Shown: positions 4,569-50,389 of the stretch, piece by piece
How the letters are laid out: every line of letters begins with the position of its first letter
Numbering within the stretch: position 1 is the stretch's first letter
Assembly: GCA_965649765.1 (NCBI GenBank)
Contig: OZ287755.1
Coordinates: 30,566,001 to 30,630,000, forward strand
Reading direction: 5' to 3'
Length of the DNA: 64,000 nucleotides
Source of the DNA: Bispira polyomma
Lineage: Eukaryota
The notes under the pieces: generated by a model
The model's input: only the letters and a program-made list of their open reading frames with translations
Told to the model about the DNA's origin: nothing
The model's database searches: none
Program-made: the position numbers and the translations under genes

Positions 4569-4574
4569 TTTTAG

Positions 4575-5550
4575 GTTCCACAAAGATTACACAGACTTAC
4601 ATGGAATCAGCCTGGAATAGACTAAATACAGCTCTACGTCCAAAAACATTAAATGCTTATACAAACCAGTTTAAGACATTTGTGGCATTTACATGCTTTG
4701 CAGGCATTCATACTATGAACACTCATGTTGTTATTGCATTTCTAGAATATTTAGTGCAAAATGGAAATTTACCTGGAGCTGTGAACAATTATGTAGCAGC
4801 TATCAGATTCATGGCCAGAAAGTATGGCTGGAATATGGACATATTTGATAACAACACAATTTCAATGTTTACGAGGAATTTAACACACAATTCACAGTTT
4901 AGACCTCAGCCAAGAGGCATTTTTAAAATTCAACATTTAGGGCTGATTTCACAGGGCTGTGTCATATTGCAAGATCCAATTCTTTTTAGATTCATTTTTC
5001 TGCTGTCAATCTTTGGGTTTCTGAGAATATCCAATGTGGCCCCTCACTCTAGGGCAAAATTTGATTCATCACGACATTTATTGCGACAGGATGTAATTTT
5101 TGGCCCACCAGGGGCTCACATAATTATTAAATTGGCCAAAAACTTGCAAACCAGAACAAAAGCCCATGTTATACAAATTCCTGAGCTTACAAATCGGGTA
5201 GCTTGTCCAGTTACAGCACTCAAGGAACTTTAAGTACAAGAGATTTGAACCCTAGTTCACCCCTGTTTGTAACCAAAGATCCACCACACCACCCAGTTAT
5301 TGAAACTCATGTACGTTCTGCTTTATCCTCAGTTTTGGAACATATTGGCTTTCCAACAAATTAACATAGTTTCCACACTTTTAGAAGGTCTGGGGCCACC
5401 TTTGCTTTTAATAATAATGTTTCACTCCAAAATATAATGGCTCATGGGCTGTGGAGGTCGTCAGTAGTGTGGACATATTTGCACAAAACTTCACAGGCTG
5501 CCTCCACGGTTCCTCTCACCTTTGCCTCTGCTTTCCCTCCTCACTTTTAG
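4575..5550 (+). pseudogene. tyrosine recombinase of E1
   Basis: FGFLRISN (catalytic R). After the stop at 5233, FHTFRRSGAT...HGLWRSS..WTY supplies the HxxR and Tyr motifs. Confidence 0.92.
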
Positions 5551-15976: not shown

Positions 15977-16189
15977 TGTATAGCACAAACACATAAGGGT
16001 TCTGATAATTCAGTTCAATAGTTAGTTTATACCTTAACCCTCAGGGAATGAACCTGACACTAAAACTTCAGGAGCATTTACTAATCAATAACCAATCACA
16101 TTCATTCCACCAATTGCTGGAGCACAATTCACAATTGGGGGGGGGGTCATTCATATTGAGACCACATCACATGAAGGAACACAATAGAA
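15977..16189 (+). repeat. E2 terminal repeat A1
   Basis: near-identical to 20776-20984. Confidence 0.95.
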
Positions 16190-19100
16190 GTGTGACAAAA
16201 TCAACCTTTTAGGCATCCATTTTATACATGATTTTACATTTTTAGTCTTTATTTATTTGTGTGTTTATATTTTTTAATTGTGCAACAAGCGTTAATACTA
16301 TGAAACATTTAAGAAAAACACCATCTCCAGGATCAAAGCCCGCTAAAGTCAAGAAAACCACAGCCAAGGCTAAAAACACTACAATTCAGGATCAGGTAAA
16401 CGGGAGTTTTATATCCGATTCAAGTTCAGCCGGATCTGAGTTTAACCAGTATGCTGGCTCCAATCCTATTCACACGGATGTTTATCACGCTAATCAAGCA
16501 CTCGGATCACTTGCTACCACTACAAGCGGGCCGGCAGGCGACACAGCACAAATGCTGGAAATCTTGAAGAGATTGGAGCAGTCTAACACGGACTTAGGCT
16601 GGCGCCTCCACAGGGTGGAATCCTGAGAGTCTCAGAATTCCACGCCCTTACTTTCATCAGTACCTAACATGGGGGCCACTGGGGTTCCTATCCCACGTAC
16701 TCAGCCATTACATACAGTACAAGACTCACAAACTCTCCCAAGGGCCACCAACGTTCACGACTATGCCAGAGACGGAATCGTCCCAGGGGTGGATGCGCAT
16801 ATGCATGAAGTCGAGGAGGGGTGGATGCGTATGTATGCATGAAGTCGAAAAGGGTCGTCTCAGGTGGGACAACACCATGCAATGGTTGCTAAATCGGCTT
16901 AGTTTGTCCCAGATGGCTATGGCGACTTCTAACACATCAGGCAAGCATAACTCAATGGACGGTAAATCTTTGAAAACGATTTGTAAACTCTTCAACAGTG
17001 GCAAGTGCTCGCATAATTCTGACCATGGCACATACCGGTATGTGTGTTGGCACTGTGCCACGGCACTACATAAAGATAGCCAACATCCAGAATTTAAGTG
17101 CTATCGTTCCAATTCGTCCAAGCAAACCGACAGTAGGACTCTGCAAAACAGCTAGGTAATTTACCGACAACCAGTAGATCAGCACAGGGACGTGTATAAG
17201 TTGAGCGGAAAGGTGGTAAATAAAAAAGATCTGAGAATTAGGAACAGAAATCATGAATTTAAATTGTTTATTAATGTTTCGGGAAGTCGGACAGATGTAA
17301 ACAGTGTTAATGCTACAAATTGGTGTCAAAATGATGATACTGGAGAAAGTACAAAAGATGTAATTAAAGTGGTCAATGGTCAATCAGACCAAATAAATGA
17401 CACATTATTTAAAGGTAGTGATAAAAATAGAAATAGAACAGTGAATAGGTATTTAAAAGAACTGATTACTATTTGTCATGTAAATGTTAAATCTAGTGTT
17501 GGGATGAGAAAAGTACCAAATGTGAACTCCAGTGTTGATTATGTACGGAATAATGTGAATTTGTGTAATGCAAATGTTAAATCTAGTGTTATGATGAGAA
17601 AAGTACCAATGGAAACACGAGTGTTAAAAATGTATTGAATGATGTGAAATTAAATATTTCAGGCACAGACCCAACAGTATTTACATTTATTAAGCACGAT
17701 TCTAAGGCCCGTTTTCAGGAAGAACAACATAGCTGTGACAACAGACGTGTCAACATATTTTAGGATTTAAGGTACACTAACCAAACTAACACTGGAGTGA
17801 ATCATAATGTACACGACCACAGTACAGGTTTTAAGGCTTGTGTAGATACAAATGTTAATCAGAAACAATCGGGTTTTAGTGTCATGGTGGTCACTGCCAA
17901 GGTTTCTAACGGGTGGCACTGTCAGGGGATGGGGAAATATTTTCCAATAGTACATGTGGAAACAGATAATGCTGAAATTTCGGCATTTTATTGGCAACAA
18001 CCAAGTGAAGATCGGGTGCATTATAATTACATAAAATGCCAGGATTTGCTACATATTCCACTTCACATTTCTTACACCATGGAACAAGACTTGGCAGTGT
18101 ACAACCAAATTCAGCATCATGAATTTCCGAAATTTCTCCAGTCAGCAAAAAGGCTAAGGATTTTAATCTCCCTGATAAGGATAGGGGATTTATTGCTCTC
18201 TTGGCTACAGATTTCACTTTTTATGGCCCAGATAGGGATTTTAAAAAATTTGACAATATTGATGCGTTTATTGAAGGAGCAAACATTATTAAGGACACAG
18301 GCTGTTCTAATTACAAAGGGGCTCGGATTCCTTTGCTCTCTGACTTAAATGTTGAGGCTTGGGAAAAATTGCTCAGCGACTATCCTGATAAGTTACTTTT
18401 TCAGTATCTCAAATTTGGATTCCCACTTTCCCTTACTGATCCTGATCAACTTAAAATTACTGAAGTTACTAACCGCCATTCTGCTCTTCGCTAGGATATA
18501 TATACTGGACGTCACCAGAGCCTTTCGTATCTTAAGGGTGGACCCAGTCGACGCCATGAAGCTAGGTATAAAAGTTAAGTGTAATGGCTACATTGATCCT
18601 GCAGTTGCGTTCGGCTGGGTCCACGGCGGCGTTCTAGCGTCTCTCTGACATCATGTGCTCTGTTACATCGATGACTACATTGGTATATCCCCCAGGAACG
18701 ATGCAGATAGGGCTTTTCATGATATAACTGATCTGGTGACCTCATTAGGCCTTCCTAGCAAACAGGACAAGTTATCTGCCCCTAATACTAAAGTAACGTG
18801 CTTAGGCATTGATATTGACTTGAATGAGGGCGTTATCAGCATAACTAAAGAAAAAATAAAGGAAACCTATGACACTTGTTTACAAATAAGTAACAAAACC
18901 TGGATCTCGCGGAAAAAAATTCAATCTATTCTAGGTAAGCCTCTCTACATACATAAGCGCGTGAAACCTGCACGCATTTTTGTCAATAGACTTCTTGTAG
19001 CTTTTAGGAGTAACCCACTGACAAAAAGATTTAAGGTTATTGAAGAGATTAAGGCAGATTTGCAATGGTTTGTCATTTTCTTACCAACTTTTAACGGGGC

Positions 19101-20578
19101 TACTTACATAGAACCACTAGAAAAAACCCAAGGAAATGAAGTGTTCATAGATGCTTGCCTTACTGGTTTAGGCGGCATTTATGGCAAACAAATATATGCT
19201 GTCCCTTTTCATAAAAAAATAACCTTAATCTCACAATAGTTCACTTGGAGATGTTGAACATTCTGATTGCTCTCAGATTATGGGCAGTCGAATGGGCACA
19301 CTCTTGAATAAAAATAAACTGTGACAATATGGCAGTAGTGCTGGTTGTCAGTTCTAGTAAGACTAAGGATAAATGTCTCGCTCTATGCCTCCGGAACATA
19401 TGGCTGTTGTCAGCCAAATAAGATATCACACTCGAGGTCCAACACATTAGGGGCAAAAAGAACGTCATTGCAGACTACCTTTCTAGAATATATTCAGAAA
19501 ATCCAATAACTGTTGACATTAACAATGATGACTATAAACACCTCATCTGGAATCATATTCCACTAGCTTATTTTAATATAAATTTTACATTATAATTTAA
19601 GGTGCTTCGACTGTTACACAGCCACTTATGACTTCAGCATGGGACAGACTTAACACTGCTTTTCACCTAAATACTGCATCAACATACAGTAATCAGTTTA
19701 AGACTTTTTTAGCTTTCAATTACTTTGCTGGGATTCAAGCAGTTGACACACAATCATTCCTCGCTTTCCTAGAATATTTAGTACAAAATTCCCAAGGCTA
19801 TTGCAAACTATATTTCTGCTATTAATTTTATGGCTGGGAAATTTCATTGGGATTTGGCTATATTTGAAAACAACACGGTTGCTTTATTTATGAGAAGTTT
19901 GTCCCATAATTCACATTTCAGACCTCAGCCTAAAGGCATATTTAACGTTAAACATATGGCTCTTATCTCGCAGGGTCGCGACATACTTTCTGATCCTGTG
20001 CTATACAGGGCCAACATTCTCCTTGCTTCCGGGTTTCTTCGCATATCCAACATTGCTCCACACTCTAGGGCTACTTTTGACCCCTCCAGACATTTCTTAA
20101 GAAAGGATGTCATATTTGGCCATCCAGGGGCCCACATTATTCTCAAGTGGGCCACAAACCAACAGGATAGGTCCCAGTGACATGTAATTCAAATCCCCAC
20201 GGTTAAGAACATCATTCTGTGCCCTGTGAGGGCCCTACATAGATTACTCTCATCTAGACACCTTCTTGACTCTGCACTTTTGTTTGCAGAATCTCACCAT
20301 CCAAACTTCTCAGTCATAGACACTCACGTGCGTTCTGCACTCACTTCTGTGTTGACACATATAGGCATTCCACACAAATCACACACATTCCACACATAGA
20401 GAAGGTCAGGTGCCACATATGCCTTTAATAATAATGTTTTTTTTACAAAATATCATGTCTCATGGACTGTGGAGGTCATCAGCAGTTTGGACCTACCTTC
20501 AAAAAACACCACAAGCAGCCTCCACAGTCCCCCTTACCTTTGCCTCCTCTATTCCCCTAAATTTTTGACTTTGGGTTT

Positions 20579-20984
20579 GGGTGTTTTTAAAATCTGGATA
20601 TTTTAAAATCCTATTATACTACATTCATTGATAACATTACTTATTTTACTAATATGTACAGTAATAAAAACCTCAAACCTAGTTTTAGTCCCGTGTTCAT
20701 ACTTGCAAACTTCATTCAACTTTTTAGTTCTACAACCTAACTTTGGCCTTGACCTAATACTTCACTAGTGAACTGTGTATAGCACGAACACATAAGGGTT
20801 CTGATAATTCAGTCCAATAGTTAGCTTATACCTTAACCCCTAGGGAATGAACCTGACACTAAAACTTCAGAAGCATTTACTAATCAATAACCAATCACAT
20901 TCATTTCACCAATTGCTAGAGCACGATTCACAATTGGGGGGTCATTCATATTGAGACCACATCACATAAAGGAACACAATAGAA
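20579..20984 (+). repeat. E2 internal B1-A2 junction repeats
   Basis: B1 20579-20775 abuts A2 20776-20984 (GAACTG|TGTATAGC). Confidence 0.95.
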
Positions 20985-21080
20985 AAGTGCCCACCGCCAC
21001 CCCTTCTTCCACCAATATCCCTTATTAATAATAAGGTTTTCTTAAGGCACTTGATTAGGAACAACTCTGTTGTTTTTGTT

Positions 21081-21236
21081 AGCAGCAATGTGGACTCGTG
21101 ACCGTGTGGAGGTATGGTTCCCCCTTGGTAACTACCCCTTGGGTGGGCTCCAGGGAGGATTATTAGCTCTGCAGGTGGAACCTTCCTCTGCTAGGCGACT
21201 AGGTGCCACAAGTCACGAGCCCCCTGCATTGCTGCT
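21081..21236 (+). ncRNA. candidate structured RNA motif in the A2-B2 spacer of E2
   Basis: nested stems AGCAGCAATG/CATTGCTGCT, CTCGTGAC/GTCACGAG, TGTGG/CCACA, GGTTCC/GGAACC; CTAG-GCGA-CTAG GNRA hairpin; homologue with swapped outer stems at 48438-48595 (-). Confidence 0.75.
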
Positions 21237-21535
21237 TAGGCATTGAAACATAGCACACACTTTTAAGGATATTTATTTTATGATACTTTAGTCTTGCATA
21301 CCTAGGGCAGATTTAAAGGATTACTGCAGTATGTCTGTTAGATAGTCCCATTTTCATATGCAATAATTATATGTTTTACATTGATGCCTCCTGCGCGGGT
21401 TTTTTCTATATTTATTTTTGATATGGTAATAACCAGTAACATATGGTCAGTGATGAATTATTGGTTTATACACTTTGGAAGGACTTGTTTAATTACGTCT
21501 TGTGATATTTCTTTTTTATTTTCTGTACTTTGTAC

Positions 21536-21733
21536 GGGTGTTTTTAAAATCTGGATATTTTAAAATCCCGTTAAACTACATTCATTGATAACATTATATA
21601 TTTTACTAATATGTACAGTAATAAAAACCTCAAACTTAGTTTTATTCCCGTGTTCACACTTGCAAACTTCATTCAGCTATTTAGCTCTACAACCTAACTT
21701 TTGACTTAACCTTAATACTGCACTAGTGAACTG
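21536..21733 (+). repeat. E2 terminal repeat B2
   Basis: near-identical to 20579-20775. Confidence 0.95.
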
Positions 21734-22029: not shown

Positions 22030-23690
22030 AAGACTGGAGGCACAAAATATAGACAAATTTGGATTTATTCAGTTTGGTGAATTCTCGGTAGCAATTCATG
22101 ACATCAGAAACAAATTAAGGGCACTACATTAGAATAGCATGAATTTGTTTACATTTTAAAAGTTCCCAATTTTCAGGGTATACAATTTGTAGTTACCTCC
22201 CAATTATCCACAAATGGGAAAAACACCTTTTGCATTCGGTTATTGGAATAAACAGCTTTCCATGTTAATCAGATAATAATTTATATGGCTACCCATTAAA
22301 ATTGTTTTCGGAAATAACATTGTCCCATTTTGATAAAAATCACAAAACAGCTCTGGATTACCCTGAGGACATTAAAGCTTATCTGAAACAAAAAATAGAA
22401 TTTGAGGCCATTCTTGGTCCCTTTACCCAAACTTGCATATATGAATTATACGTATGCTTCCACAGGACTAGTAACATACACGTATTTAGACCCCTTGGTG
22501 CTAACTCTTCCTTCTATAGATATCATCACTGAACAGATTCAGAAAATAGGAAGAGAATATAAGATAGATATCAGTATCGCGTTAAAAGTAAGAATTGTAA
22601 CAGTAGATCTAGCTGGTTACTTTTTGCTAGGCCTAAAACTAGATAATTACTATATAGGTGCTTGTCTTCCGTTTTGATTTTGGCACAGAAGTGCCATGTT
22701 TTAGCATCTCAGCCACACAGTACGTTTTATAATGTGCAATGTCACAGCTATTATGTCACAAATTATACTGATAACTTAATCAGGTATGGTACGTCACCTG
22801 ACAGTCAAAAATCTTTTAGTATCCTGTATGACTTACTACAAGAACTGTGTTTCACCCCGAGTACTAATGAGCTTTTACAACCAAAGCAAAAAGGTAGTTT
22901 GCCTGGAAGTATTAATTTCACTGTTTCTGCCCCAGATGATAAACTAAAAGATACCATAAAGACATGTGCAGCCTGGCAAGGCAGAAACAAATGCCCCAAA
23001 CGTGACCGACAGTCTGGGTTCACTCCTTTACATCTTCAATGTGTCAAAGGCTCAAGAGTATTCTTAAATCGTATGTTGGAAACACTTATAAATGTCACTA
23101 GTAGTAACATCATTGACTAACACATAGAATTCCATCAAGACTAAAACTGGTTCTCTGAATTCCTTTCAAAGTTTAACGAAGTAGCCTTTTTTAATAAATT
23201 CAATGGAACTAGATCCATGTTTGGAAGGTATAGGTGGTCCACGCAATAATATGATGTTTACTAAACATCTACCAATGGGCTACAAAAACCTGAATATAGC
23301 ACACATCGATATGTTAAATATACTGGTAGCTGTAATATTGTAAAACAATTAATGGCAGGAAAAAAACTGTGTTTTGTGGCAATGAGGCAGGAGTAACAAT
23401 ATTAAACTCAGGTAGAACCAAAGATCGCATCATAGCTGCAATAGCAAGAAACATATTGATAGAGGTAACCACAAAGGACAGAAACCTCAGAACAGTTTAC
23501 ATTTAGGGAAAAACAAGCCTGCTTTCTAGGTGGTCTCTTCAGATAGATAGCGACATAAAGTTAAAACAATACGTACATAACCTACAATGGCTCCAGGTAG
23601 ATGATAGTATGTTAGACATCATTTGGTCTATCTAATTGTATCACCATCACTTCTCCATTTCGCCTCACAGGCTGCTTCCAGGGCTCATCA
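22030..23690 (+). mobile_element. highly decayed YR retrotransposon RT/RNase H remnant (E4)
   Basis: NHKTALDYP..AILGPF, LPSIDII, KIDIS, CLPF, RVFLNRML and MLNILVA fragments. Confidence 0.8.
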
Positions 23691-23913: not shown

Positions 23914-26264
23914 TTTATACTACGCCAAAAGAATTGCAAATCCTTGTGTATGCGATTAATGTGGCGACAGAGCATTGCTCCTACAATGTCACCAAATTAG
24001 CTTCAATTTAAATCTTCTCACATTATATGACTTCCAAATTACCTGATCATGATAAAAGATAAAGTTTTTAATATCTTTTTAAATCATTTTTAATGGTTGG
24101 GACAGCCTTGAGAACATGTCCCTGTGTATCTTTATAATTTCCTATGGGGGTCTAATTATGCGTGCCTCGGGCTTACGTTGTAGAAGCTTCACTAGAATGG
24201 GGCGATCCCTACACATTTCCTACACATTTATTGCAATGGTGGTGCATTGCCACCTCGATCCTTGCATGTTTTGAATGTCCACCCCTGCTGTGAACGATCC
24301 CTTGCAAAAAGTTCAGTTTTAAACTAAATTTCTAGAAAGATTTGTGCGGTACTGTAGAATGCAATTCTTCACCCTATGTTCTTGTATGCATTTTATGTGC
24401 ATGCAACACTTACTAAACTCGTCCATAGGGCAATTGAACCAACCAAATTTTTACAGCGTTTTGACACAAATTCACAGGCATCTCGTTCGTTGATTGCTTA
24501 AGTATGATCCACCTTTAACTCACCCATTCACACATGAAACGGTACCCCCTTATTCTAACTGCTCCTTTTTACAAGACCGAGACTTCCCAACCAACTCCAA
24601 AAAGTTTTGTGATATATTTTATACCATGGCCAACTTTAGGTTTTTAGAATGGATCCTGAAAATAATGGAAATACATCACTCTGTACAGCACAAACTAATG
24701 TTCGTGATTTGTAAACCTGTAGTAAACATATTTCAACGTCAAAACTTAATAGAAAACTGAGTCTCACCAATCAATATATGAGTTTCTTACACCAGATGAA
24801 AAAAATTATTCAGTGGCATAAAACACTTTGCAGTGAGCTGCAGTGTGGTTTAATAGGGTCTTCTTACAGATGAAAAAAAAATTCAGTGCTATACATTCCA
24901 CCCCAGCCCCATAAGATGCATGTCATAATAACAGGCACTGGGATATATATATATATATATTTTTAAAGAGTCATATTATTATTACTAAAATGTTTGTAAA
25001 GTAACATGTTATTATAGATGAGTACACTAGACATTTAGAAATATACTTTTTAAATTACTCTACAAAGTTACAAGATTACTATGAATATACTTTTTAAAAA
25101 TACTATATAAAATTAGTATATGACTAGCAATACTTTGATTTTCTAATAGATAGTACCTCTTATACTTTAATGGAGGTACATTGTTAAAGCAATTGATTAT
25201 GATATACTCTTGAATAGATATGTGCAAAGTGAGAATCTAGCCTATAGTGCTTTACAATTTAATTAAAGTTTTATCAATTGTAAGCAGTTACTGCTTGGTT
25301 ATACGAGGACTTTGTAGTGTTATGGTTTAACAGAATAATAACTAAGTTATACAGTAACAAAACCATTCTATTGTTTTCAAAAAATTTACTTGTGCCGATC
25401 TGCCGGAACGTCTTGATATTGGCTCTTACTAAAATGACACAAAGTTTGTACACAACAAGGAGGCGTAAAAAAAAAACATTTTTAAAAGTTACAATAGCAT
25501 GCGCAATACGTGACTGCTTTGTGGGCAACAAAGCGGGAGCATGTCCAGCTCATATGTGAGGACCCTATGTGGCTGAGCATTACAGCCCATTAAGCTAATT
25601 ACATCACGCACCCTTATTTGCCAGGTCTGTAAACTTGGTTAAGCCAGTACTTGTAAAACTGTGACATTTGTTAGAAGAGCAGTGACATGACAATAGGGGT
25701 ACAATCTGTATGATTTTTACGCATAGTCCACCGTGTCACCTCCTGTCAGCATAATTTTCTAAAGTAGCCACAGATGCGAGGGGACTGCATCCACTGTGCA
25801 TCTAGTGCTCTCCTGTATGTTACCATCTGGTCTTATGTAAAACCCACTATGTCTCAATGACTTTGTTTTTCCATTCCTTCTGAAACTTGAACAACAGATG
25901 TGAGCAACATATCCCATCATGCTTATGGGTGGGAATTAAAGGGTAGGAATTCTAAATGTACCAGTAACTCTTCTGAATATTATTTTGAAAGTGAATTTAT
26001 GAGGGAAATGGAGAAAAGAGCGAGAATAGGATTGTGGTGGGCTGACGCCTCGGCGACAGTCTCCTCAGTTCTGGCACCAGGCTACTGGGGGGCCAATTAG
26101 GCCACATGGGGTCATGAGGACAACTATATAAGGGTTTGGTGCCCAACAAGCGCCATCATTAAAACAAATGCATTCTCAAAGAAAGAGTGTTTTAACAATT
26201 GGGGCTTTACTACCTTACGTTGATTTTAACTTTGGTTTTAAGCTTATTTTAAATACACCTGAAA

Positions 26265-27236
26265 ATGCCTAAAAGGGAATATCAGTGTAATGGGTGTTTG
26301 GGCAAGCATGAAAGGCCTGTTGGAAGGCGTTGTCGGTTTTACTTGGAGGACAGCGTCGCCGAGGAAGTGGCCATGGTTGATCCTGCTTCTACCAATGGTT
26401 TGTCTGATTCTGTGGGACAAATATTACAACAACTCCAGGTGTTGAATGAAAAAAAGGAAAGCATGGATCAATGTGTGCAAGTCACGGAGGCAGCGCTGTG
26501 TCCACCCAGCACCAATACGGCATGAACAAACCCTTCTATACCTAGTATTAGTGTTGCAAAAGTATCTGAGCCAGTAATAGAAACCGTGATTCCATCCCTA
26601 GAATTTTGCGTTCAAATGATCAAATACAGGCCCAGGTAGACCAGCGTTTAGTGCAGTTGCAGCAACTCAATGAGTTTACCGGAGGTAAATTAAAGTCACA
26701 GCGTGGTGGTGCTGAGGCCCCTATTAAGAAAAGCATTGATTGGCCTCAGAATTTTGTACTGTCGGGAGTGAAAAAAACCAGGCCCACGTACGATGATTTA
26801 ACATTAGTGCAATTTACTTCAGGATTTGTTTGATGCATACAGGAGCAAAAAACTTCGGAAGTACGGGAAGCAATGCTCGAGTATCTTGCCAATTTGATGG
26901 ACGACGCCCACAATTTCTCGTGGGAAGCAGCCAAGGCGTCTCACGCTACTTTGCTTACTAATATGGAACTTGACCACCTTAAGTGGACGGACGTTGACAA
27001 AGTAGACCGTGTCCGTAGAGTTCACGCTCAATGCCATATTCCAAACAGTACAAAAAATTCAGGCGCTTCAAAGTCCAATTCCAAGCCAAAAAGTCTGTCG
27101 TTTTTTCCAGGAAGGAACTTGTAAGTTCAACACTAGCAACCGTACTTCCAGACAGTTGTTCAAACACTGCTGCGAAAACTGTGATGGCTCACATCAGACT
27201 AAACTATGTACTAAAAAATCAGTAGTAAAAAACTGA
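26265..27236 (+). pseudogene. gag of E3 (N-terminal CxxC-H-RP-G-C motif, C-terminal zinc-finger region)
   Basis: CNGCLGKHERPVGRRC; KSQRGG..WPQNF..RPTYDDL; CRFFQEGTC...HCCENC..H; several stops and frameshifts. Confidence 0.88.
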
Positions 27237-27758
27237 GTGGCCACTGCAGTACTGCAGTGGACCCTAAACGTCAAAATGATGTGATATATTCTAGATTGGT
27301 GTACAACTCTAACTTTAAAGATTTTAAATTGTGTGATAAATTGTATGTTAAATATCTCATGTGTAACAGATATGTAAAAAGGTCCTATAGGGACATGGTA
27401 GTGGATGGGAAAAAAGGTAATTCTCGAGTCCATACTAGCCGACCCGTGGTGGGCGACATTGGGAGTAATAGCAGGGACCAAAACCCTCTGTTAGGTGTAA
27501 ACATAAAGTTGCCAACAAGTTGGCTGTGTCGAAAAAGAACAAACCAATGTTACAAAAAGGTGTGAAGTACACACAACAACTTCTCAATCAAGCCTCCCTC
27601 AAGGCGGACATGTCAATAACCATTCAATTAGCCAAGTTTCCCGTTCTGCTTATGTCACAAAAAGTGTGAACTCGGGAAAGGGGGATAGTCGCCCTAATTA
27701 TAGGGGCCTTCAGTTACCTGTTATTACTCAGCTTAATGCTAATGTGTAGGCTGAATAC

Positions 27759-29230
27759 TTGCAAGGTTATTGGGATTGGAAACTCCCTTTGTTAATCAAG
27801 TTTGGATTCCCCCTTGATTGTGATGACGTACACGAGTTTAAATCAGAACGTAATAATCACTCCTCAGCTGTACAATACCCACAACATGTGAGCCACTATT
27901 TGCGTGAGGAATGCAAATTGGGTGCTATGTATGGCCCTTTTGCCACACCTCCTGTTAACAAGTTACATACTTCCCCATTTATGACCAGGGATAAATCCAG
28001 CTCGTCTAACCGCAGAGTTATAATTGATCTCAGCTGGCCAGAAGGTCATTCGGTTAATGCTGCAGTATCCCCTAACTCGTATTTGAACAGAGAATTTATA
28101 CTCACATATCCATCGATTGACACTATAACAAATCAAGTTATAGCCAGGGGGAGGGGTTCTCTAATCTTTAAAGCAGACATCAGTCGCGCCTTTAGACATG
28201 TGACCATGGACCCTAAGGATGTCAATTTATTGGGACTTTATTGGGATGGGTACTATGTGGACGGCTCCCTCCCCTTTGGCTACAAGCACGGCTCAGCAAT
28301 ATTCCAGCGAATTTCAGACAGCATCCGGTTCATAATGAAGGGTGAAGGACACCATATATTGAACTATATCGACGATCTATTATGCTGTTCTACTGCCACA
28401 AAAATATACAAAACCTATTATCGCCTGCAAAGTCTTCTGGCAGAACTAGGTCTTACTCTGAGCCAGAAAAAGCTAGTCCCTCCAGCAACTCGGGTCACCT
28501 GTTTAGGAATTGACATAGACACAGTAGACTTTATCACCTCAATACCGGCTGAAAAGCTGGAGAATATACAAGTTATGTGTGATGAATTGGCGAGTAAAAA
28601 GTACTGTACAAAAAGAGAGCTCCAGTGTTTGCTGGGTTCTCTTTTATACATATCAAAATGTGTGAAATACTCCAGGTTCTTTCGTTCAAAATTTCTTCTG
28701 AATTTCGTCAAGACTTGCATTGGTTCAGGTCATTTTTGAAAAAGTACAATGGAGTGTCTTTCTTTTATCATAAACCTGTGAGTGCCACTTTAGAGTTGGA
28801 TGCTTGCCTAAAAGGAATGGGTGGAGTTTATGGGAAACAGGTTTATACACTGTCTCTGCCTCAAAATATGCATCACCACAACATAGCCTTCCTGGAAATG
28901 TTGAACATTCTAGTGGCATTAAGGTTATGGGCCCATCTCTGGAAAGGACAGAAAATCCTCCTGAAATGTGACAACCAGGCGGTGGTTAGTGTCCTTACTC
29001 ATGGCAGAACGCATGATTCTGACTTAGGCCTGTGTTCCAGAAACATTTTCATAGTGGCTAGCCACTTTGATGTTGAATTAAAAGTGATTCATATACTAGG
29101 TCAAAACAATACTGTAGCTGACTTGCTGTCTAGATGGACCAACTCTACACAGGACATTAATTGATTACATGCAGGTGACGTCCAGTGGTGTCCAGTGACT
29201 GAAAAACATCTGCTACTTAATGTGCATATA
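27759..29230 (+). pseudogene. RT/RNase H of E3
   Basis: SPFMTRDK, RVIIDLS, LPFGYKHGS, YIDD, LDACL, EMLN, CDNQ, ADLLSR. Confidence 0.93.
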
Positions 29231-29275
29231 TGATGACTGTTTTACACAATGCTACTGGTAGTGTTCTTTTTTCAG

Positions 29276-30205
29276 ACAAAAACCCAGTACAACAACTATT
29301 ATATAAAAAGGCAACAGAGAAACTACACCTGGCTTTCTGCAGATCCACTGCAAGATCCTATAATGCAATGTATAGAGTCTTTCTGGCCTATGCTGCCTTC
29401 ATGGACATGCAGTTAAATCAGGTGACTGTGTTTGACCTTTTGTTATTTCTAGAGTTTTTACAATTCAATAGTGTAAAACCAGCCCACATGGCTAATTATC
29501 TATCTGCCATTAAAGCTAAGTCAATAATTCACAATGTAAACATTCATGCATTTAGTGACCCCTGTATTGCATACTACCAGAAAGCAGTGCAGATGGCTGC
29601 TCCTCTGCATGTTAAGTTGAAAAAAATAATTGACATTCCAACCTTGGGAAAAATCATCCAAATATGTCATACCACATATATGGGCCTTGTCTTCAAAGCC
29701 CTTTACTTGCTTAGCTATTTCTCCTTCCTCAGACTGTCAAATCTGGTTCCACATTCTGTTAACCAATTTTCTGCTCTAAAACATTTGGCAAAAGCTGACG
29801 TCATGATTCATCATCAAAAAGCAGTACTTCTCATAAAATGGTCCAAAACAATGCAAAATAATAAACAAATTAAACTCATTACTGTCCTTAGATTGGTACA
29901 CTCTCCATTGTGCCCTGTTCGTGATCTAGAAGATATTTTAGCACTCACCCCTTCTGGACATAATTTCTCCCTTTTTCAATTTAGAACTAATGCACAATGG
30001 ACTCCCCTGACTGATTCCAAGGTTCGAATGCATTTCAAAAATATCCTTACTAGACTACGATTACAAGATTTAGGACTTACCTTCCACGCTTTCCGGCACC
30101 TGGACGTCAGATTGCGTGTGGAGGTACGTCACTGACACTGTTGATGCTGGCCATCAGGTGGCTGACACCTTTCGAAAACAGCTCTCTTCTTCCTTACCTT
30201 CCTAG
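29276..30205 (+). pseudogene. tyrosine recombinase of E3
   Basis: FSFLRLSN, WSKT, CPV, FHAFRH; WTSDCVWRY follows in a shifted frame after a deletion. Confidence 0.92.
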
Positions 30206-30982
30206 CCCTACTACATTGGAATTTGGCTGTTTCTAGTCATTTTCTAGCCTTTGTTCATGTATCTTTTTTTAAAGAACTTCTTTCTGTAGCAGTAATTGAA
30301 ACATTTCTATATGACTTGCTACCAACTTAGCGTGTGCTTAACTATTAAACAGTAATTGTAAAAAACTAGTACCTTACTTAAATACTACTTAAAGTATAGA
30401 GGTTTGCTTTACACTGTTAACTAGTAATCCAAGGCTTCTTGTCTTATAGTAATTAATTGTGTAAATTCAACTTAACTTTTTCACTTTAAGGTCACCTTTG
30501 TCATAGTAAATTAACTTGGACAATGAACTTTCTTTATCTAAGGTGACCTTACCAAATCACTTAGCAACGCTAAAACATTTATTTAAGGTGGCCTTAAGTC
30601 ACCATGAGTTCTGTAAATAATTGTTTCTAATTCTGGTGACCTTAAGATGCCTGTAGATAGTTTTAGTCTAACCTGTAGTTTAACAGTAAATGTTTTACCG
30701 CATTCTGTAGTATTATTATCTTGTCTTCTTGACCTCTGACCCCTCTGGCCTGGGGCTGGGAAATGTGGTGGGCTGACGCCTCGGCGACAATCCCCTCAGG
30801 TCTGGCACCAGGCTACTGGGGGGCCAATTAGGCCACCTGGGGTCACGAGGACAAGTATATAAGGGTTTGGCGCCCAACAAGCGCCATCATTAAAACAAAT
30901 ACATTCTCAAAGAAAGAATGTTTTAACAACCCACCCTTACCCTCCCATTTAACCGTTTGTTATAGTTTCAGGATGTGGTGCA

Positions 30983-31173
30983 AACAAGAGTGACAGCCGA
31001 CAGTGCCATCGTCAGTGAAGCTTATGGTTTAGCTAGCTTCTATGCACACTTGTGGTCCAGATCCTAGAAAAATTGTGTTAGGTAAGGGGCTATATTGCTT
31101 AGCCAAGTAAGGACACCTGGAGAAGCTAGAGGATCTTTGTAAATAACCTCGCCAACACGGTTTACCACTTGTT
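30983..31173 (+). ncRNA. candidate structured RNA in the A2-B2 spacer of E3
   Basis: closing stem AACAAGAGTG..AGCCG / CGGTT..CACTTGTT; CTAGCTTCT/AGAAGCTAG; TCCAG/CTGGA; GGCTA/TAGCC; single copy, so no covariation support. Confidence 0.5.
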
Positions 31174-32366
31174 AAGGTTCAAGGTTAAGGCCAGAGAGAC
31201 AATGTTTTAGACGAAACAGACATTTACGTTAAGATTTTTACTCTTTTATTTCTACAATTTACATGTAAAAGTGATTACTATGTTTATACACAATATTAGA
31301 ATTTTATACTTTGGCTTGCCTGTGTGTAAGTTTTTATATTCAAAGTCACTTTTACCTGTGTTAATGTTAAATATTATTCAAATCTTAGTATTGCTACCTC
31401 AGTGACGCTGTTTCTAGTCATTTTCTAGCCTTTGTTCATGTATCTTTTTTTAAAGAACTTCTTTCTGTAGCAGTAATGGAAACATTTCTATATGACTTGC
31501 TACCAACTTAGCGTGTGCTTAACTATTAAACAGTAACTGTAAAAAACTAGCACCTTACTTAAATACTACTTAACGCATAGAGGTTTGCTTTAAATTGTTA
31601 ACTAGTAATCCAAGATTACTTGTCTTATAGTAATTAATTGTGTAAATTCAACTTAACTTTTTCACTTTAAGGTCACCTTTGTCATAGTAAATTAACTTGG
31701 ACAATGGACTTTCTTTATCTAAATCACCATAAGTTCTGTAAATAATTGTTTCTAATTCTGGTGCCCTTAAGTTGCCTGTAGATAGTTTTAGTCTAACCTG
31801 AAGTCTAACAATAAATGTTTTACCGCATTCTGTAGTATTATTATCTTGTCTTCTTGACCTTTGACCCTTCTGGCCTGGGGCTGGGAAATGAGCATAGTTT
31901 GTAATAGTTTATTACTGGAGCAGGCTGGTATGAGATAGCCAGCACTTTAATGCTGGTTCGCACATTCAAGCCCAGCCCCATAATATTCAGGCCATGATAA
32001 AAAGCACTGGGATATATAAATTTTATTAAAATATTCATATTAATATTACTAAAATGTTTGACTAGCAATTTTAAAATAGATTGTAGCGCTTAGACTTTAG
32101 TGGAGGCACATAGTTACAGCAATTGATTATGATATGATATGATATATTGTTAGTCTAGTCTTACAAAATCTGCCAGATCTCTTTCTTATATGTTACAGAA
32201 TCCCTAAAATTGCAGAGACTAAAACTGTTAAAAACAGTAGCAAAAGTTGTACTGATAAAAGTGAAATGAAGTTTGACGAATCTAACAAAGCTAGCCATCA
32301 CCACGGGAGAAAACTGAAAGTGGTCAATATGTTTCAAGCAACTACAGAAACAACTACAGAAACAAG

Positions 32367-46820: not shown

Positions 46821-47289
46821 ATACATATACATATATATATAATTAAAAATTGTAAAAATAAATATTTGGTTTTGACGGAGTGGAAATTGGGACATGTGAC
46901 ATGAATAAATATCAATGTAAACAGTCAGCTGACTTATATTAAAATTTAGTTATATTTGACTGGTATTATATAGTATAAATAGTATAGTAATAGTATCGCA
47001 CCGTCAGCACACAGAAATACAATCTATGTGGCAAAGGGCGTTTAACATAAATGAAATATATCTTTTAATGTTTGAGGTAATAAGTAGTAGTAGCAAAAAT
47101 GGCCTTCTGTGACGTCATGGAAATATACAAACGCGTTTGGGTGGCTGTGGGCATCATAGGCCACTGTTTTTGGTATTGATAGAAACATTGGACTCCAATT
47201 ACGATTATTCTTACATTAGTTTCGGAGGTTATACTTCATGTTGACAAATATTTGCAATATGTGTTTTAACAATATATTTCTTAGCAAAT

Positions 47290-48060
47290 TATTGGCGGTT
47301 TATAACTCAATATTTTGACTTTAAATCCAAAATATTGACTTTATATTGGTAGTGATGGTGGTTTATAAGTCAATATTTTGACTGTAAATCCAAAAAGTTG
47401 ACTTTATATTGGCAGTGATGGTGGTTTATAAGTCAAAATTTTGACTTTAAATCCAAAATATTGACCTTATATTGGTAATGTTGGTGGTTTATAAGTCAAT
47501 ATTTTGACTGTAAATCCAAAATATTGACTTTATATTGATAGTGATGGTGGTTTATAAGTCAATATTTTGACTTTAAATCCAAAATATTGATTTTATATTG
47601 GTAGTGATGGTGGTTTATAAATCAAAATTTGACTGGTGGTTTATGAGTCAATATTTTAACTTTGAATCCAAAATATCGACTTTATATTGTAGTATTGGCA
47701 AAAAATACAGTAGTGTTGGCGATAAAAACAGTAGTGTTGGCGAAAAAACCGTATGTTGGCAAAAAAACACATTAGTGTTGGTACAAAAAACAATGGTGTC
47801 GGTAAAAACAATAGGTATTGGTGCACTTTTTCAGTAGTTTTGGCAAATTTTAGTAGTGTTGGCGAAAAAAGAAAGAACAGTAGTGTTGGCAATTTTTTTC
47901 AATAGTGTTGGTGAAGTTATTCAGTTGTGTTGGTGAACACCACTGAATATTTAGCCAACACTACCACTATAAAGTCAATATTTTAGGTTCTAAGTCAAAA
48001 TATTAAGTTAAATACCACCAGCACTACTAATAACAGTTCATATAAACATACCAACGTATT
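47290..48060. mobile_element. second copy of the foldback/minisatellite element, with more ~59-bp units
   Basis: same units and same inverted right end as 45128-45778. Confidence 0.7.
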
Positions 48061-48437
48061 AGTATCAACATCTACTACAGTAGTCAGAAACAAATATATT
48101 TCTGAATTATGAATCATATCATTAAATATTAATCTTGAATAGTTACCATTGAAAACAGTGTAAAAGAGGTCAAACCCCTTCACTAAAACAATTTTAGTTG
48201 TATTAATTCAAATCTTTTAAGCACAAGTACAAAGTCATGTGCAATCATTAGCTACAAGATTCACCCATACTGAACCATAATCTTTCCTTAACACTTGTAG
48301 TGATGGCAATATTCAGCAAGACAATATTCAGCAATCTCTGATGCTGTACTATACTATTCTAACTTCTAACCGAGATAATACAGCCAGTATATAAGTACTC
48401 AAGTCAGTATTATAAAACCCACCATCTCTAACGATAT

Positions 48438-48595
48438 CCACCTTAATGGTTAGAACCCAGCTCCTGCGGCACCTAATCGCCTAGCAGTGGAGGTTCCCAA
48501 CTGCAGATCTGAATTCCCTGGTAGTCCACAACAGGGGGTAGTTACACCTTAGAACCAACACCACACGGACCTGGGTTCGAATCCATTAAAGGTGG
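48438..48595 (-). ncRNA. second copy of the spacer RNA motif, probably in an ORF-less YR-element remnant
   Basis: reverse complement shares CCGTGTGG..TGGTTC..GTAACTACCCC..GTGG.CT..CCAGGG..AG.TCTGCAG..GGAACCT..CTGCTAGGCGA.TAGGTGCC.CA with 21081-21236; upstream C-rich tract CCCACCTCCTCCCCTTACC as in E2 and E3. Confidence 0.75.
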
Positions 48596-50389
48596 TACGC
48601 GAGCTATCTAGGTGAAGGTCGAGATGAGCGTTAACCATTGATAACAACTTCATATAGCCATCTTATTGACTAACTTGTATAAGTTGTTTCTACGAACATG
48701 CTCGTGTCTATTCGCAGGTAATAACAACATACTATTGCTGTGGTAAGGGGAGGAGGTGGGATAATTTCATGTGGTGTGCTTTCTTCAGAGCCACGTTTCA
48801 ATATGGGGTTCTAAAAAGGTGGGAAAAGCAGTATGGCTCGACACAAAGAGAATGGCTGTATGTGTGGGTGGATTGACAGAATAAAGTTATGGTCAACTCA
48901 TCCCCCCCCCCTTAAAGTAGTTATATGTAAACATTTTTGTATTTGTGGAAAACTGAAGTAGTGCTTGCTAATATATTCTCTTATTTCTATTTTTGCTGTG
49001 CCATGTTGTGTAATCGGTGGTGTAGAAAGGACTTTACAATACTAGTTTGTTGGGAATATTGTAAGATAAATCACTAGCTATTAGTGACCTCTTTTGATAT
49101 CACATGTATAGTCTGAACACAGGTCTAAGTCTCTATTTCTTGCGTAAATCCAGATCATGTGGGAAATCATCTTGATGAGCTCTTCAATTATTCATGTTTT
49201 CACGTAAAATCCAAAGTAAAACCGTAAAGGCCAGGTAAGCAGTATAACATATCGTGTGTTGGATTGATCATTAGCTTGAGGAAAATTGAAGAGAACATTA
49301 ACACGCTTTGCCGTGTAACCTTATTTATTATGTAAAATTATGATTTCTATAAAATTTCCATAAAAAGCTTTGAGTTCCAACTCTTTTATTTAATGATTAA
49401 AAATAAAATTGCTAATATGCCACTGAAAAATATTAAGGATGGAATATACTGTTTGTACTCTCCGAATGCATTACAAAAATAATTCTTAGGCTATTTGACA
49501 CAAAACAATACTAAATTGATTTACATAAATTTGGTGGGTGGAAGGAACATGGGACAAAAAATAAGTATTAAATTGGTGATTAGTTGCGGCTCCTTACTAA
49601 CAGTAGGCACTATATAGGGTCCCTTATAGTTCTCGTATGTTTTCCAGATACAGTCCTTCTTGCAAATGTTATTTTATACATTTACTGAAGAAATATCACT
49701 CACACCTCCATAAGTCACCGTAATAATCTGAAGTGACGGTAATATGACTTTTACGATTCTAATGTAAGTCTGACAAAAAAGCAGTAGAAATGTGATGTGA
49801 TGAGTTGGGCATTATTTCTAGTTTTCTTTGAATCTGTCTCTTTGAATCTGGTGTAGGGTGACCCCCTGGTATTAATTGAATCAGGAGTCCATTTACAAAT
49901 GTTTTTGCGTTATGCATTGATGACATAGACATAGTGGTACTACTAGAAAAACTGCCAAAATAATGGGTACCACAACCAAATATTCCATATCTAGTTATTG
50001 ACTTATTCATTCATACAGGCATTGTATATCTGTTACAATGATCTAACAAAGAATAATCAATAAATTCTATATCATCACATATAATCCATCAATTCTATAT
50101 CATCACAAAATAAACTTACAGTTATGTTATTTCCACAAGATACTATTCCATCCCCAATGTTTGAAATAACAGTGCTTTATATCTTTGCTTTATATCAATA
50201 TTTTAATATTGATGGGTTTATGGGAATTAAACAGACGTTAGACCACAAAAAGTGCATGTTTATGTTTGCTGCAGAAAGACCGAACAATTGTACTGGAATA
50301 TATTTTAAAAACTTGATAAAGTTTTATGTTGAACAAAGGAACCAAATGGTTAGATCTCAAAGAACAATGTAAATTGTAAGTGCAATACT

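What the first reader, a model, noticed from the sequence alone, without database searches (positions are those of the whole stretch)
21081..21236. Conserved, covarying structured RNA in the A2-B2 spacer of a split-direct-repeat YR retrotransposon
Seen: this GC-rich island in AT-rich DNA folds into nested stems: P1 21081-90/21227-36, P2 21095-102/21212-19, P3 TGTGG/CCACA, P4 GGTTCC/GGAACC, an inner CCTTGG/CCAGGG hairpin, and CTAG-GCGA-CTAG (GNRA loop). The same core lies reverse-complemented at 48438-48595. There the two outer stems have unrelated sequence but still pair (CCACCTTTAATGG/CCATTAAGGTGG, GAACCCAG/CTGGGTTC). Three core substitutions there give G-U pairs on the element-sense strand. 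Established: split-direct-repeat YR elements lack a tRNA primer-binding site, and their priming mechanism is poorly defined. I do not recognise this fold as hammerhead, HDV or twister. Inference: a dedicated element RNA module, which could be an RT-binding/priming or packaging signal (as in retron msr or hepadnaviral epsilon) or a new ribozyme. It may be transcribed separately from the B1-A2 junction.
Basis: partly seen in the sequence, partly recalled or inferred. Interest (0 to 1): 0.92.

Follow-up and report, generated by a model that had tools for sequence, protein, structure and literature searches.

The report
Conserved RNA rod in Ngaro retrotransposons
A 160-base stretch in the non-coding tail of tyrosine-recombinase "jumping genes" folds into an RNA rod that diverged families of this genome have kept by compensating mutations. 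It matches no known RNA family, and its job is untested, though it is most likely a handle by which the element's RNA is recognised for copying.

Summary
Window 21079-21238 (+) and 48437-48591 (-) are two copies of one GC-rich, strand-specific structured module. They fold better than all 200 shuffles (z -4.6 and -3.4).

- **Abundance:** a covariance model matched all 150 candidates it scored in this genome. The exact 18-nt core occurs 622 times, against 0 for its reversed control.
- **Structure:** across six families the two outer stems and a third helix covary. G:U pairs outnumber A:C 35 to 9, so the coding-sense strand is the folded one.
two inner stems fail (TGTGG/CCACA and CTAG-GCGA-CTAG). 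GUGGAGG/CCUCUGC plus a GGCG/UGCC hairpin with an A-N-U-N-G-G loop fit better.
- **Context:** the rod always sits after the A repeat and a C-rich tract and before B. Three families are full Ngaro-like elements with the recombinase gene upstream. Three are solo A-rod-B units, including the 48-kb copy. It is not a free SINE or MITE.
- **Conservation:** it is the best-conserved DNA between families whose recombinases are only 38-50% identical.
- **Searches that found nothing:** Rfam, tRNA scan, papers, RNA runs, and nine related elements of another genome.

Function is inferred only. I favour a cis recognition handle on read-through genomic RNA. This scan has already reported the same rod three times on other DNA of this genome.

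The parts
15977..16195 (+). A1 repeat, the left end of the element; gag region follows
   Evidence: Direct repeat with 20776-20989. The left boundary is seen.
19791..20402 (+). Remnant of the tyrosine-recombinase ORF of this copy
   Evidence: tblastn with the 301-aa ORF3 of the neighbouring element gives E 4.5e-15. The R box and H-x-x-R are seen in relatives.
20580..20775 (+). B1 repeat. It holds AATAAA at 20663-20668 and ends in the junction CACTAGTGAACTG.
   Evidence: Direct repeat with 21537-21733, 92% identical. The sequence was read.
20776..20989 (+). A2 repeat
   Evidence: Aligns with A1 up to 20989 and then diverges.
20990..21013 (+). C-rich tract that starts the spacer directly after A2. 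It is present 50-170 nt upstream of the rod in all six families.
   Evidence: It also opens the spacer of the rod-less element at 30930.
21079..21238 (+). The structured RNA rod (family A copy), whole model match
   Evidence: CM R1 scores 171.8 bits, E 4e-52. Fold z is -4.6.
21081..21103 (+). 5' strands of the outer stems P1 (21081-21090) and P2 (21092-21103)
   Evidence: Covarying helices 1 and 2: 13 of 21 pairs have changes on both sides.
21106..21112 (+). P3 5' strand GUGGAGG, which pairs with 21185-21191
   Evidence: 99.1% of cells paired and 3 pairs covary.
21116..21121 (+). P4 5' strand GGUUCC, which pairs with 21177-21182
   Evidence: Conserved with no covariation; 78-88% paired.
21123..21155 (+). 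Central hairpin region: CCUUGG (21123-28 or 21137-42) with CCAGGG (21150-55), around the invariant AACUACCC
   Evidence: The two registers are 89% and 81% paired; unresolved.
21165..21174 (+). Invariant AGCUCUGCAG segment
   Evidence: Alignment. Genome-wide variants are; CA to UG keeps the pairing with UG through G-U.
21185..21191 (+). P3 3' strand CCUCUGC
   Evidence: At least 13 sequence variants of this strand occur among the genomic copies.
21194..21207 (+). P7 hairpin GGCG / UGCC with hexaloop A-N-U-N-G-G
   Evidence: 99.2% paired. The two N positions vary freely in 622 copies.
21211..21236 (+). 3' strands of P2 (21211-21224) and P1 (21227-21236)
21239..21536 (+). AT-rich remainder of the spacer
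21537..21733 (+). B2 repeat, the right end. AATAAA lies at 21620-21625 and the end is at CACTAGTGAACTG.
48432..48597 (-). Second copy of the rod (family B), with its own outer stems
   Evidence: CM scores 113.4 bits. Fold z is -3.4.
48032..48961 (-). Solo A-rod-B unit that holds the second copy. The A-like part is 48762-48961. There are no ORFs and no B1 upstream.
   Evidence: Homology boundaries at query 606-631 and 1406-1560 in four other loci, plus an A pair 4864 bp apart elsewhere. There are no ORFs of 100 aa or more within the unit or next to it (nearest at 52102) and no flanking direct repeat.

Best explanation
**What it is (shown).** It is a 160-200-nt structured RNA domain that is an integral part of one clade of Ngaro-like, split-direct-repeat tyrosine-recombinase retrotransposons. 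It lies in the only unique non-coding segment between A2 and B2. It is folded on the coding-sense strand. Its variable, covarying closing stems (P1-P3) hold a core of about 35-40 invariant bases.

**How it most likely works (inferred).**
- Both B copies carry AAUAAA. Only transcripts that read through B1 contain the B1-A2 junction that the split-repeat replication model needs, and only those transcripts contain the rod.
- The rod would therefore act as a cis recognition handle that marks the replication-competent genomic RNA.
- It would be bound by an element-encoded protein (reverse transcriptase and/or Gag).
- That binding would select the RNA for packaging and recruit the polymerase for first-strand cDNA synthesis. 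The 3'UTR structures of R2 and stringent LINEs do the same for their own enzymes.
For: **Structure is real and is RNA-sense**
- z is -4.6 and -3.4.
- An alignment made without any structure gives 18 of 49 predicted pairs with both sides changed.
- On 32 distinct sequences 92% of cells pair, against 43-49% when partners are slid. 122 cells have double changes against 41 in shuffles.
- G:U outnumbers A:C 35 to 9.
- The sense MFE is 8-17 kcal/mol better than the antisense MFE in all six families.

**Integral to the element**
- The recombinase ORF lies upstream and B1/B2 flank the rod in families A, D and E.
- The A block lies about 240 nt upstream in A, A2, C and E. A1-A2 pairs are 5.7-6.6 kb apart.
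- The C-rich tract precedes the rod in all six families.

**Strong constraint**
- Rods are 77-81% identical in DNA where recombinases are 38-50% identical in protein.
- In comparisons with the more distant families B and D, the rod is the only or the best-aligned DNA segment.
- 622 exact cores occur against 0 in the reversed control.

**Position logic**
- AATAAA lies in both B1 and B2.

**Points to an element-encoded partner**
- A distant Ngaro lineage in the same window lacks the rod.
- Nine related elements of another genome lack it. Two of them carry a different covarying hairpin module between B1 and B2.

**The open question**
- How YR retrotransposons start cDNA synthesis is stated as unknown in PMC7192593.
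Against: - There is no RNA or protein-binding evidence of any kind; no RNA run was listed.
- The rod is about 400 nt upstream of the presumed poly(A) site, not at the RNA 3' end where initiation would occur.
- It lies outside the intron proposed elsewhere in this scan. It would therefore not distinguish unspliced from spliced RNA.
- Near-invariance of many core bases across families with very different proteins fits a conserved host partner or catalysis as well as, or better than, a co-evolving element protein.
- Read-through of the B1 AAUAAA is assumed, not shown.
Confidence: 0.4

Rival explanations
1. It is a host-factor-binding RNA element in the 3' non-coding region. It would promote nuclear export or stability of the intron-containing genomic RNA, in the manner of the MPMV constitutive transport element, the IAP RTE or the MusD transport element.
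For: - It is a rod of similar size, placed between the last ORF and the terminal repeat, as in those retroelements.
- Earlier notes of this scan propose a conserved intron in these elements. If that holds, unspliced RNA would need an export route.
- Many invariant core bases across families with 38-50% identical recombinases suit a conserved host partner.
- An adjacent C-rich tract is present in all families and could bind poly(C)-binding proteins.
Against: - On inspection of the alignment, there is no pair of identical internal loops in twofold symmetry as in the CTE.
- A distant lineage in the same genome lacks the rod. Related elements in another genome also lack it. A universal host factor would not predict that.
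- The splice itself is unverified, and binding cannot be tested here.
Confidence: 0.2
2. It is a new class of self-cleaving or otherwise processing RNA that trims element transcripts. For example, it could produce unit-length RNA from tandem or circular templates, or create a defined 3' end that folds back as a primer.
For: - The architecture is typical of ribozymes: variable covarying helices around an invariant junction core.
- Ribozymes are known in other retroelement orders.
- Tandem B-A-rod-B-A-rod-B arrays exist (L059).
- The primer of YR elements is unknown.
Against: - No known ribozyme model matches even at E 10.
- No hammerhead, HDV or twister core motifs appear in the alignment.
- I saw no copies truncated at a common internal position among the loci examined.
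- Cutting inside the spacer would remove B2 from the RNA, which the split-repeat model needs.
Confidence: 0.1
3. It is the functional core of a separate short non-coding RNA transcribed from the A2 copy of the promoter-bearing A repeat and ending at the B2 poly(A) signal. Solo A-rod-B units would make it too. It would act in trans as a regulator, decoy or helper.
For: - A2 is a full copy of A1, so any promoter in A is duplicated.
- Solo A-rod-B units exist in three of six families.
- The rod is the only strongly conserved content of such a unit.
Against: - No transcript evidence exists.
- No Pol III boxes are conserved across families, and there is no tRNA-like fold.
- Solo units are equally expected from A1 x A2 recombination, like solo LTRs.
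Confidence: 0.1
4. It acts at the DNA level, either as an imperfect palindrome or cruciform, or as a hairpin in single-stranded cDNA. It would serve the tyrosine recombinase or second-strand synthesis.
For: - It is a long inverted repeat.
- DIRS-1 is reported to amplify through single-stranded cDNA (PMC7192593).
Against: - G:U outnumbers A:C 35 to 9, and the sense strand folds 8-17 kcal/mol better. The first cDNA strand is antisense.
- The likely recombination site is the B|A junction, which contains an 8-bp palindrome. That junction lies elsewhere.
- The invariant loop bases are not symmetric.
Confidence: 0.05
5. It is an unrelated SINE or MITE that happened to insert into the spacer of one element family.
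For: - Many genomic matches to the 48-kb copy share only about 200 bp, with sharp edges at query 975-977 and 1171-1176.
- The minus strand of copy B contains a B-box-like GGGTTCGAATCC.
Against: - In all six families the rod sits at the same place after the A end and the C-rich tract.
- Where flanks are detectable they are the A and B repeats (e.g. C4:23991508 with C4:23991784).
- Flanks simply diverge faster than the rod: A is 74% identical where the rod is 84%.
- The outer stems vary while the core is fixed, the reverse of a MITE.
- There is no tRNA-like fold, and the B-box-like word occurs in one family only.
Confidence: 0.03

Closest known systems
3'UTR RNA structures of non-LTR retrotransposons recognised by their own reverse transcriptase (R2 3'UTR; stringent-type LINE 3' stem-loops shared with partner SINEs)
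   Same: - It is a conserved, lineage-specific structured RNA in the 3' non-coding part of a retroelement.
- It is kept in non-autonomous or ORF-less derivatives; here these are the solo A-rod-B units.
- Different lineages carry different modules at the same place.
   Different: - Those elements use target-primed reverse transcription, and the structure reaches the RNA 3' end.
- Here the host is a tyrosine-recombinase element with split direct repeats, and the rod is about 400 nt from the presumed poly(A) site.
- No binding has been shown.
Constitutive transport element of Mason-Pfizer monkey virus and the IAP/MusD RNA transport elements
   Same: - It is a rod-like structure of roughly 150-230 nt.
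- It lies between the last gene and the terminal repeat of a retroelement that may need to export unspliced RNA.
   Different: - No sequence similarity exists, and no duplicated symmetric internal loops were seen.
- Host-factor binding is untested.
- The rod is absent from sister lineages in the same genome.
Hairpin near the 3' end of DIRS-1 mRNA, noted by Poulter and Goodwin as a possible primer of reverse transcription (cited in PMC7192593)
   Same: - It is a structured RNA near the 3' end of a tyrosine-recombinase retrotransposon.
- It has been discussed in connection with the unknown priming step.
   Different: - The DIRS-1 hairpin spans 14 nt (positions 4792-4805) at the very 3' end of the mRNA.
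- This is a 160-200-nt multi-helix domain with an invariant core, internal to the spacer, in Ngaro-like elements and not DIRS1-like ones.
Self-cleaving ribozymes of retroelements (HDV-like in R2/L1Tc, hammerheads in Penelope-like elements and retrozymes)
   Same: - It has covarying helices around invariant junction bases.
- It is embedded in a retroelement's non-coding RNA.
   Different: - No Rfam ribozyme model matches even at E 10.
- No cleavage evidence exists.
- It is larger than the small ribozymes.
Retroviral packaging / dimerisation signals (psi, DIS)
   Same: - It is a cis-acting structured RNA with conserved loop sequences.
- It includes a conserved 6-nt palindrome (CUGCAG) in an apparently unpaired segment.
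   Different: - It is located 3' and not in the 5' leader.
- Family-level variants of the hexamer, such as CUGUGG, are not palindromes, so kissing-loop dimerisation is not supported.

Membership tests
Ngaro-like split-direct-repeat tyrosine-recombinase retrotransposon (the host element) | A1 ... B1-A2 ... [quoted passage not shown] | tested here: met
   - A is 15977-16195 and 20776-20989. B is 20580-20775 and 21537-21733.
- The same B1/B2 pairs flank the rod in families D and E.
- The definition is taken from PMC4157794.
Ngaro-like split-direct-repeat tyrosine-recombinase retrotransposon (the host element) | Reverse transcriptase / RNase H ORF | tested here: met
   - The neighbouring element hits RVT_1 (E 5.5e-11) and RVT_3 (E 2.5e-6).
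- This element has tblastn matches at 18496-19487.
Ngaro-like split-direct-repeat tyrosine-recombinase retrotransposon (the host element) | Tyrosine recombinase ORF (R ... H-x-x-R ... Y) | tested here: inconclusive
   - A homologous ORF lies upstream of the rod in families A, D and E.
- An R box (FLRxS) and HAFRH are seen.
- Pfam gives only Phage_int_SAM_5 at E 0.04, and PDB gives nothing.
- The catalytic Tyr was not located, because the copies are broken.
Ngaro-like split-direct-repeat tyrosine-recombinase retrotransposon (the host element) | No methyltransferase domain (which separates Ngaro from DIRS1/PAT) | tested here: inconclusive
   No methyltransferase hit appeared in the five ORFs scanned, but the ORFs are fragmentary.
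Any Rfam 15 family, including hammerhead, HDV-like, twister, hairpin, SRP, 5S, tRNA | Covariance-model score at or above the family's gathering threshold | tested here: not met
   - The whole window gave 0 matches at gathering thresholds.
- No match overlapped the rod even at E 10 in four family representatives.
tRNA-derived SINE / MITE | tRNA-like head or terminal inverted repeats conserved within the family, and insertion independent of a host element | tested here: not met
   - ARAGORN found 0 genes.
- The outer inverted stems vary while the core is fixed.
- The position after the A end and the C-rich tract is constant in six families.
- Target-site duplications were not examined.
tRNA primer-binding site of LTR retroelements | About 18 nt complementary to a tRNA 3' end, beginning TGG, and conserved | tested here: not met
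   The TGG-containing segments of the rod are not conserved beyond 6-7 nt, and family D lacks the TGG (alignment).
Retroviral dimerisation initiation site | Loop palindrome whose variants remain palindromic | tested here: not met
   CUGCAG is the majority form, but the recurrent variants CUGUGG, CAGCAG and UUGCAG among the 278 pattern matches are not palindromes.
CTE-type RNA export element | Extended stem with two identical internal loops in twofold symmetry that bind NXF1 | tested here: inconclusive
   No duplicated symmetric loops were seen on inspection of the alignment. Binding cannot be tested with these tools.

The most novel reading that the evidence does not exclude
The rod is a catalytic or self-priming RNA. 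It would be either a new class of self-cleaving ribozyme or an RNA that supplies the primer for first-strand cDNA synthesis. Either reading would answer how tyrosine-recombinase retrotransposons, which have no tRNA primer-binding site, start reverse transcription.
Probability: 0.12. Interest if true: 0.9.

Novelty: new variant of a known kind. Interest (0 to 1): 0.62.

Why it matters
Tyrosine-recombinase retrotransposons (DIRS, Ngaro, PAT, VIPER) are the least understood order of retroelements. The literature read here states that the start of their reverse transcription and its primer are unknown (PMC7192593).

No paper in the searchable library links Ngaro elements with an RNA secondary structure. 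No Rfam family covers this one.

A domain with about 40 invariant bases, three covarying helices and more than 600 copies is a concrete handle for experiments on that open question. It could be tested for binding, cleavage or export.

It is also a well-populated candidate for a new RNA family. The finding that another genome's Ngaro-like elements hold a different covarying module in the same spacer suggests that the spacer is a general site for such signals.

Tried and rejected
1. **Rfam.** No match at gathering thresholds on the window, and none at E 10 on four representatives.
2. **ARAGORN.** No tRNA or tmRNA.
3. **RNA evidence.** No RNA run was listed for 20560-21720.
4. **Cross-species search by pattern.**
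   - The metagenome scan gave one hit. It is a chance match in GC-rich bacterial coding DNA: only the 16-nt hairpin aligns, at 10 bits.
   - The viral contig scan gave no hits.
5. **Cross-species search by protein.**
   - Recombinase and RT queries found relatives in only one other assembly, ENA ERZ22147071.
   - The model found no rod in nine of its loci. All nine were searched with default filters, and four of them also with filters off.
6. **More copies from the genome.** I did not try to read whole rods through long-gap patterns.
7. **Kissing-loop dimerisation through CUGCAG.** Rejected, because the variants are not palindromic.
8. **tRNA primer-binding site inside the rod.** Rejected on the alignment.
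9. **Loop-to-junction pairing (ACUAG with the CACTAGTG junction).** Rejected. Family E changes the loop but keeps the junction.
10. **Pairing of the C-rich tract with G-rich rod loops.** There are 7 complementary bases in family A but only 4-6 in the others, and both partners are of low complexity. Not pursued.
11. **A structured RNA in the spacer of the second element (30930-31406).** The whole spacer folds no better than shuffles (z +0.2).
12. **Literature.** No paper holds both 'Ngaro' and 'RNA secondary structure'. Broader searches gave nothing relevant.

Full report
**1. The observation**

Window 21079-21238 (+) is a GC-rich island. Its GC is 0.56, against about 0.36 for the surrounding kilobase.
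- As RNA it folds to -78.3 kcal/mol. Shuffles average -59.3, giving z -4.6, and none of 200 shuffles folds as well.
- The reverse complement of 48432-48601 folds to -67 kcal/mol, with z -3.4 and 0 of 200 shuffles as good.
- The two copies share a core of about 110 nt. Their outer 25-30 nt on each side differ in sequence yet still pair.
  - A1 is 15977-16195 and A2 is 20776-20989.
  - B1 is about 20580-20775 and B2 is about 21537-21733.
  - The B|A junction reads CACTAGTGAACTG|TGTATAGCAC.
- The spacer begins with a C-rich tract (20990-21013) directly after A2. The rod follows about 65 nt later, and B2 starts about 300 nt after the rod.

**2. How common it is**

A BLAST of the 156 nt against the window's own 1.04-Gb genome found about 20 near-identical copies, plus several groups at 77-81% identity.
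- I built a covariance model (R1) from nine sequences of six families. It matched all 150 candidates that were scored in the genome.
- The exact core GCTAGGCGA-N-T-N-GGTGCC occurs 622 times, and its reversed control occurs 0 times.
All structural work therefore rests on six families: A, A2, B, C, D and E.

**3. Structure and strand**

An alignment made without any structure (MAFFT plus RNAalifold) already gave 18 of 49 predicted pairs with changes on both sides.

On 32 distinct sequences aligned to the model:

| Measure | Observed | Control |
|---|---|---|
| Cells that form standard pairs | 92.4% | 43-49% when 3' partners are slid by 1-3 columns |
| Cells with a change on both sides | 122 | 41 in shuffles (0 of 500 reach 122) |

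It is broken in families C and E, and at one pair in D.
- The alternative GUGGAGG/CCUCUGC is 99.1% paired. Three of its pairs covary: G-C to A-U twice in family D, and A-U to U-A in family B.
Among the first 100 of the 622 copies listed, I counted by eye that roughly a third carry combinations that cannot pair.
- The hairpin GGCG/UGCC with an A-N-U-N-G-G loop is 99.2% paired.
- GGUUCC/GGAACC is conserved without covariation.
- The central hairpin with CCAGGG can be drawn in two registers, 89% and 81% paired, and is unresolved.
- G:U pairs outnumber A:C mismatches 35 to 9 in one representative per family.
- The sense strand folds 8-17 kcal/mol better than the antisense strand in all six families.
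- A recurrent family-level change of the invariant CUGCAG to CUGUGG keeps its predicted pairing with UG only through G-U wobble.

The folded strand is therefore the coding-sense RNA.

**4. Context**

- **Full elements.**
  - Families A, D and E have a B1/B2 direct-repeat pair around the rod, with spacings of 957, 1038 and 1045 bp.
  - They also have a homologue of the recombinase ORF upstream.
- **The A block.**
  - A conserved block of the A repeat lies about 240 nt upstream of the rod in families A, A2, C and E.
  - In several family A copies and one family E copy, a second block lies 5.7-6.6 kb further upstream. These are full-length A1-A2 pairs.
- **Solo units.** Families A2 (L050), C (L021) and B (the 48-kb copy) have A upstream and B downstream, but no B1 and no ORFs. 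They are solo A-rod-B units.
  - Such units are expected from A1 x A2 recombination, like solo LTRs.
  - They could also arise from separate integration of a small circle.
- **The C-rich tract.** All six families have it 50-170 nt before the rod.
- **Matches limited to about 200 bp.**
  - Many genomic matches to copy B cover only about 200 bp, with sharp edges.
  - Where flanks are detectable they are the A repeat at lower identity, 74% where the rod is 84%.
  - The pattern therefore reflects faster divergence of the flanks, not a free short element.
- **Conservation relative to protein.**
  - Recombinases are 70-74% identical between A and E, 38-50% between A and D, and about 50% between D and E.
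  - In comparisons with the more distant families B and D, the rod is the only or the best-aligned DNA segment.

**5. What it is not**

- No Rfam family matches at gathering thresholds.
- No Rfam match overlaps the rod at E 10 in four representatives.
- ARAGORN finds nothing.
- A tRNA primer-binding site, a palindromic dimerisation loop, and pairing with the B|A junction were each examined and not supported.

**6. Distribution**

- A second Ngaro-like lineage in the same window (26033-31890; RT 34-36% and recombinase about 26% identical) has the C-rich tract but no rod. Its spacer as a whole folds no better than shuffles (z +0.2).
- Protein searches found relatives in only one other assembly, ENA ERZ22147071. 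Recombinases there are up to 56% identical and RT up to about 50%.
- Nine of its loci show the same B1/B2 architecture where intact, but no rod.
- Two of them (L062, L068) instead carry two tandem copies of a different module between B1 and B2:
  - an 8-bp covarying stem with a conserved UUGACCC loop;
  - followed by an invariant 23-nt stretch.
- The spacer thus appears to be a place where different lineages keep different structured modules.

**7. Mechanism (inference)**

- Both B copies contain AATAAA.
- Under the split-repeat replication model, the RNA must contain the internal B1-A2 junction to rebuild complete ends. Only RNAs that read through B1 qualify, and the A2-B2 spacer is the one unique non-coding segment that only they contain.
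- A recognition signal placed there would restrict packaging and cDNA synthesis to competent templates.
- Lineage-specific modules fit an element-encoded partner, as in R2 and stringent LINEs. I therefore rank this reading first, at 0.4.
- Several points argue against it:
  - the rod is not at the RNA 3' end;
  - it does not discriminate spliced from unspliced RNA;
  - its many invariant bases across diverged families would suit a host factor (export or stability, 0.2) or catalysis (0.1) equally well.
- A separate A2-driven transcript (0.1), a DNA-level role (0.05) and an unrelated SINE (0.03) follow.
- PMC7192593 states that the start of cDNA synthesis in DIRS-1 and its primer are unknown. 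It mentions only a short 3' hairpin as a candidate.

**8. Novelty and standing**

- No paper in the searchable library holds both 'Ngaro' and 'RNA secondary structure'.
- The same rod has already been reported three times by this scan on other DNA of this genome (s1-581962, s1-590168, s1-590174), with the same conclusion that it is real and of unknown function.
  - the corrected inner helices;
  - the copy count;
  - the solo-unit reading of the 48-kb copy;
  - the poly(A)-signal argument;
  - the negative test for a dimerisation palindrome;
  - the absence from a second genome, whose elements hold a different module at the same place.

**9. Limits**

- Only six independent families could be read.
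- The model-fitted alignment leans towards the model's structure.
- No RNA data and no protein-binding data exist.
- The identities of the host organism and of assembly ERZ22147071 are unknown to me.

Noticed in passing
window 20763-20785; 21721-21733; 15977: The B|A junction reads CACTAGTGAACTG|TGTATAGCAC and contains the 8-bp palindrome CACTAGTG. The same junction occurs in family E. It is a candidate core site for the tyrosine recombinase.
   Followed up: partly
L059 (G000:C8:41323155-41326317): A tandem array B-A-rod-B-A-rod-B with a 1038-bp period and 99.8% identity. It could come from unequal crossing-over, or from integration of a multimeric or rolling-circle product.
   Followed up: partly
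L062:5446-5622 and L068:4370-4547 (ENA ERZ22147071): Related Ngaro-like elements of another genome carry a different conserved module between B1 and B2, in two tandem copies. It has an 8-bp covarying stem with a UUGACCC loop, followed by an invariant stretch that includes a UUCG loop.
   Followed up: partly
L064:5312-5390 (ENA ERZ22147071): An 80-nt GC-rich hairpin sits 30 nt after B1 of another Ngaro-like element, with a C-rich tract further downstream. The region folds with z -2.2.
   Followed up: partly
window 30930-30950: The rod-less second element also opens its spacer with a C-rich tract (CCCACCCTTACCCTCCC) directly after A2. The tract is therefore more widespread than the rod.
   Followed up: no
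window 3087-5230, 18496-20402, 22284-23536, 27759-30132, 39732-41802, 63840-63999: At least six RT/RNase H/recombinase-type retroelement remnants lie in this one 64-kb window. Only one of them carries the rod.
   Followed up: partly
window 45133-45505 and 47220-47900: Arrays of a 63-bp satellite and a 21-bp repeat flank the solo A-rod-B unit. The 63-bp satellite also forms kilobase arrays elsewhere, e.g. G000:C1:60440656-60442460.
   Followed up: no
window 16137-16146 vs 20937-20942; L050: A poly-G run inside the A repeat varies in length between copies, from 6 to about 14 G.
   Followed up: no
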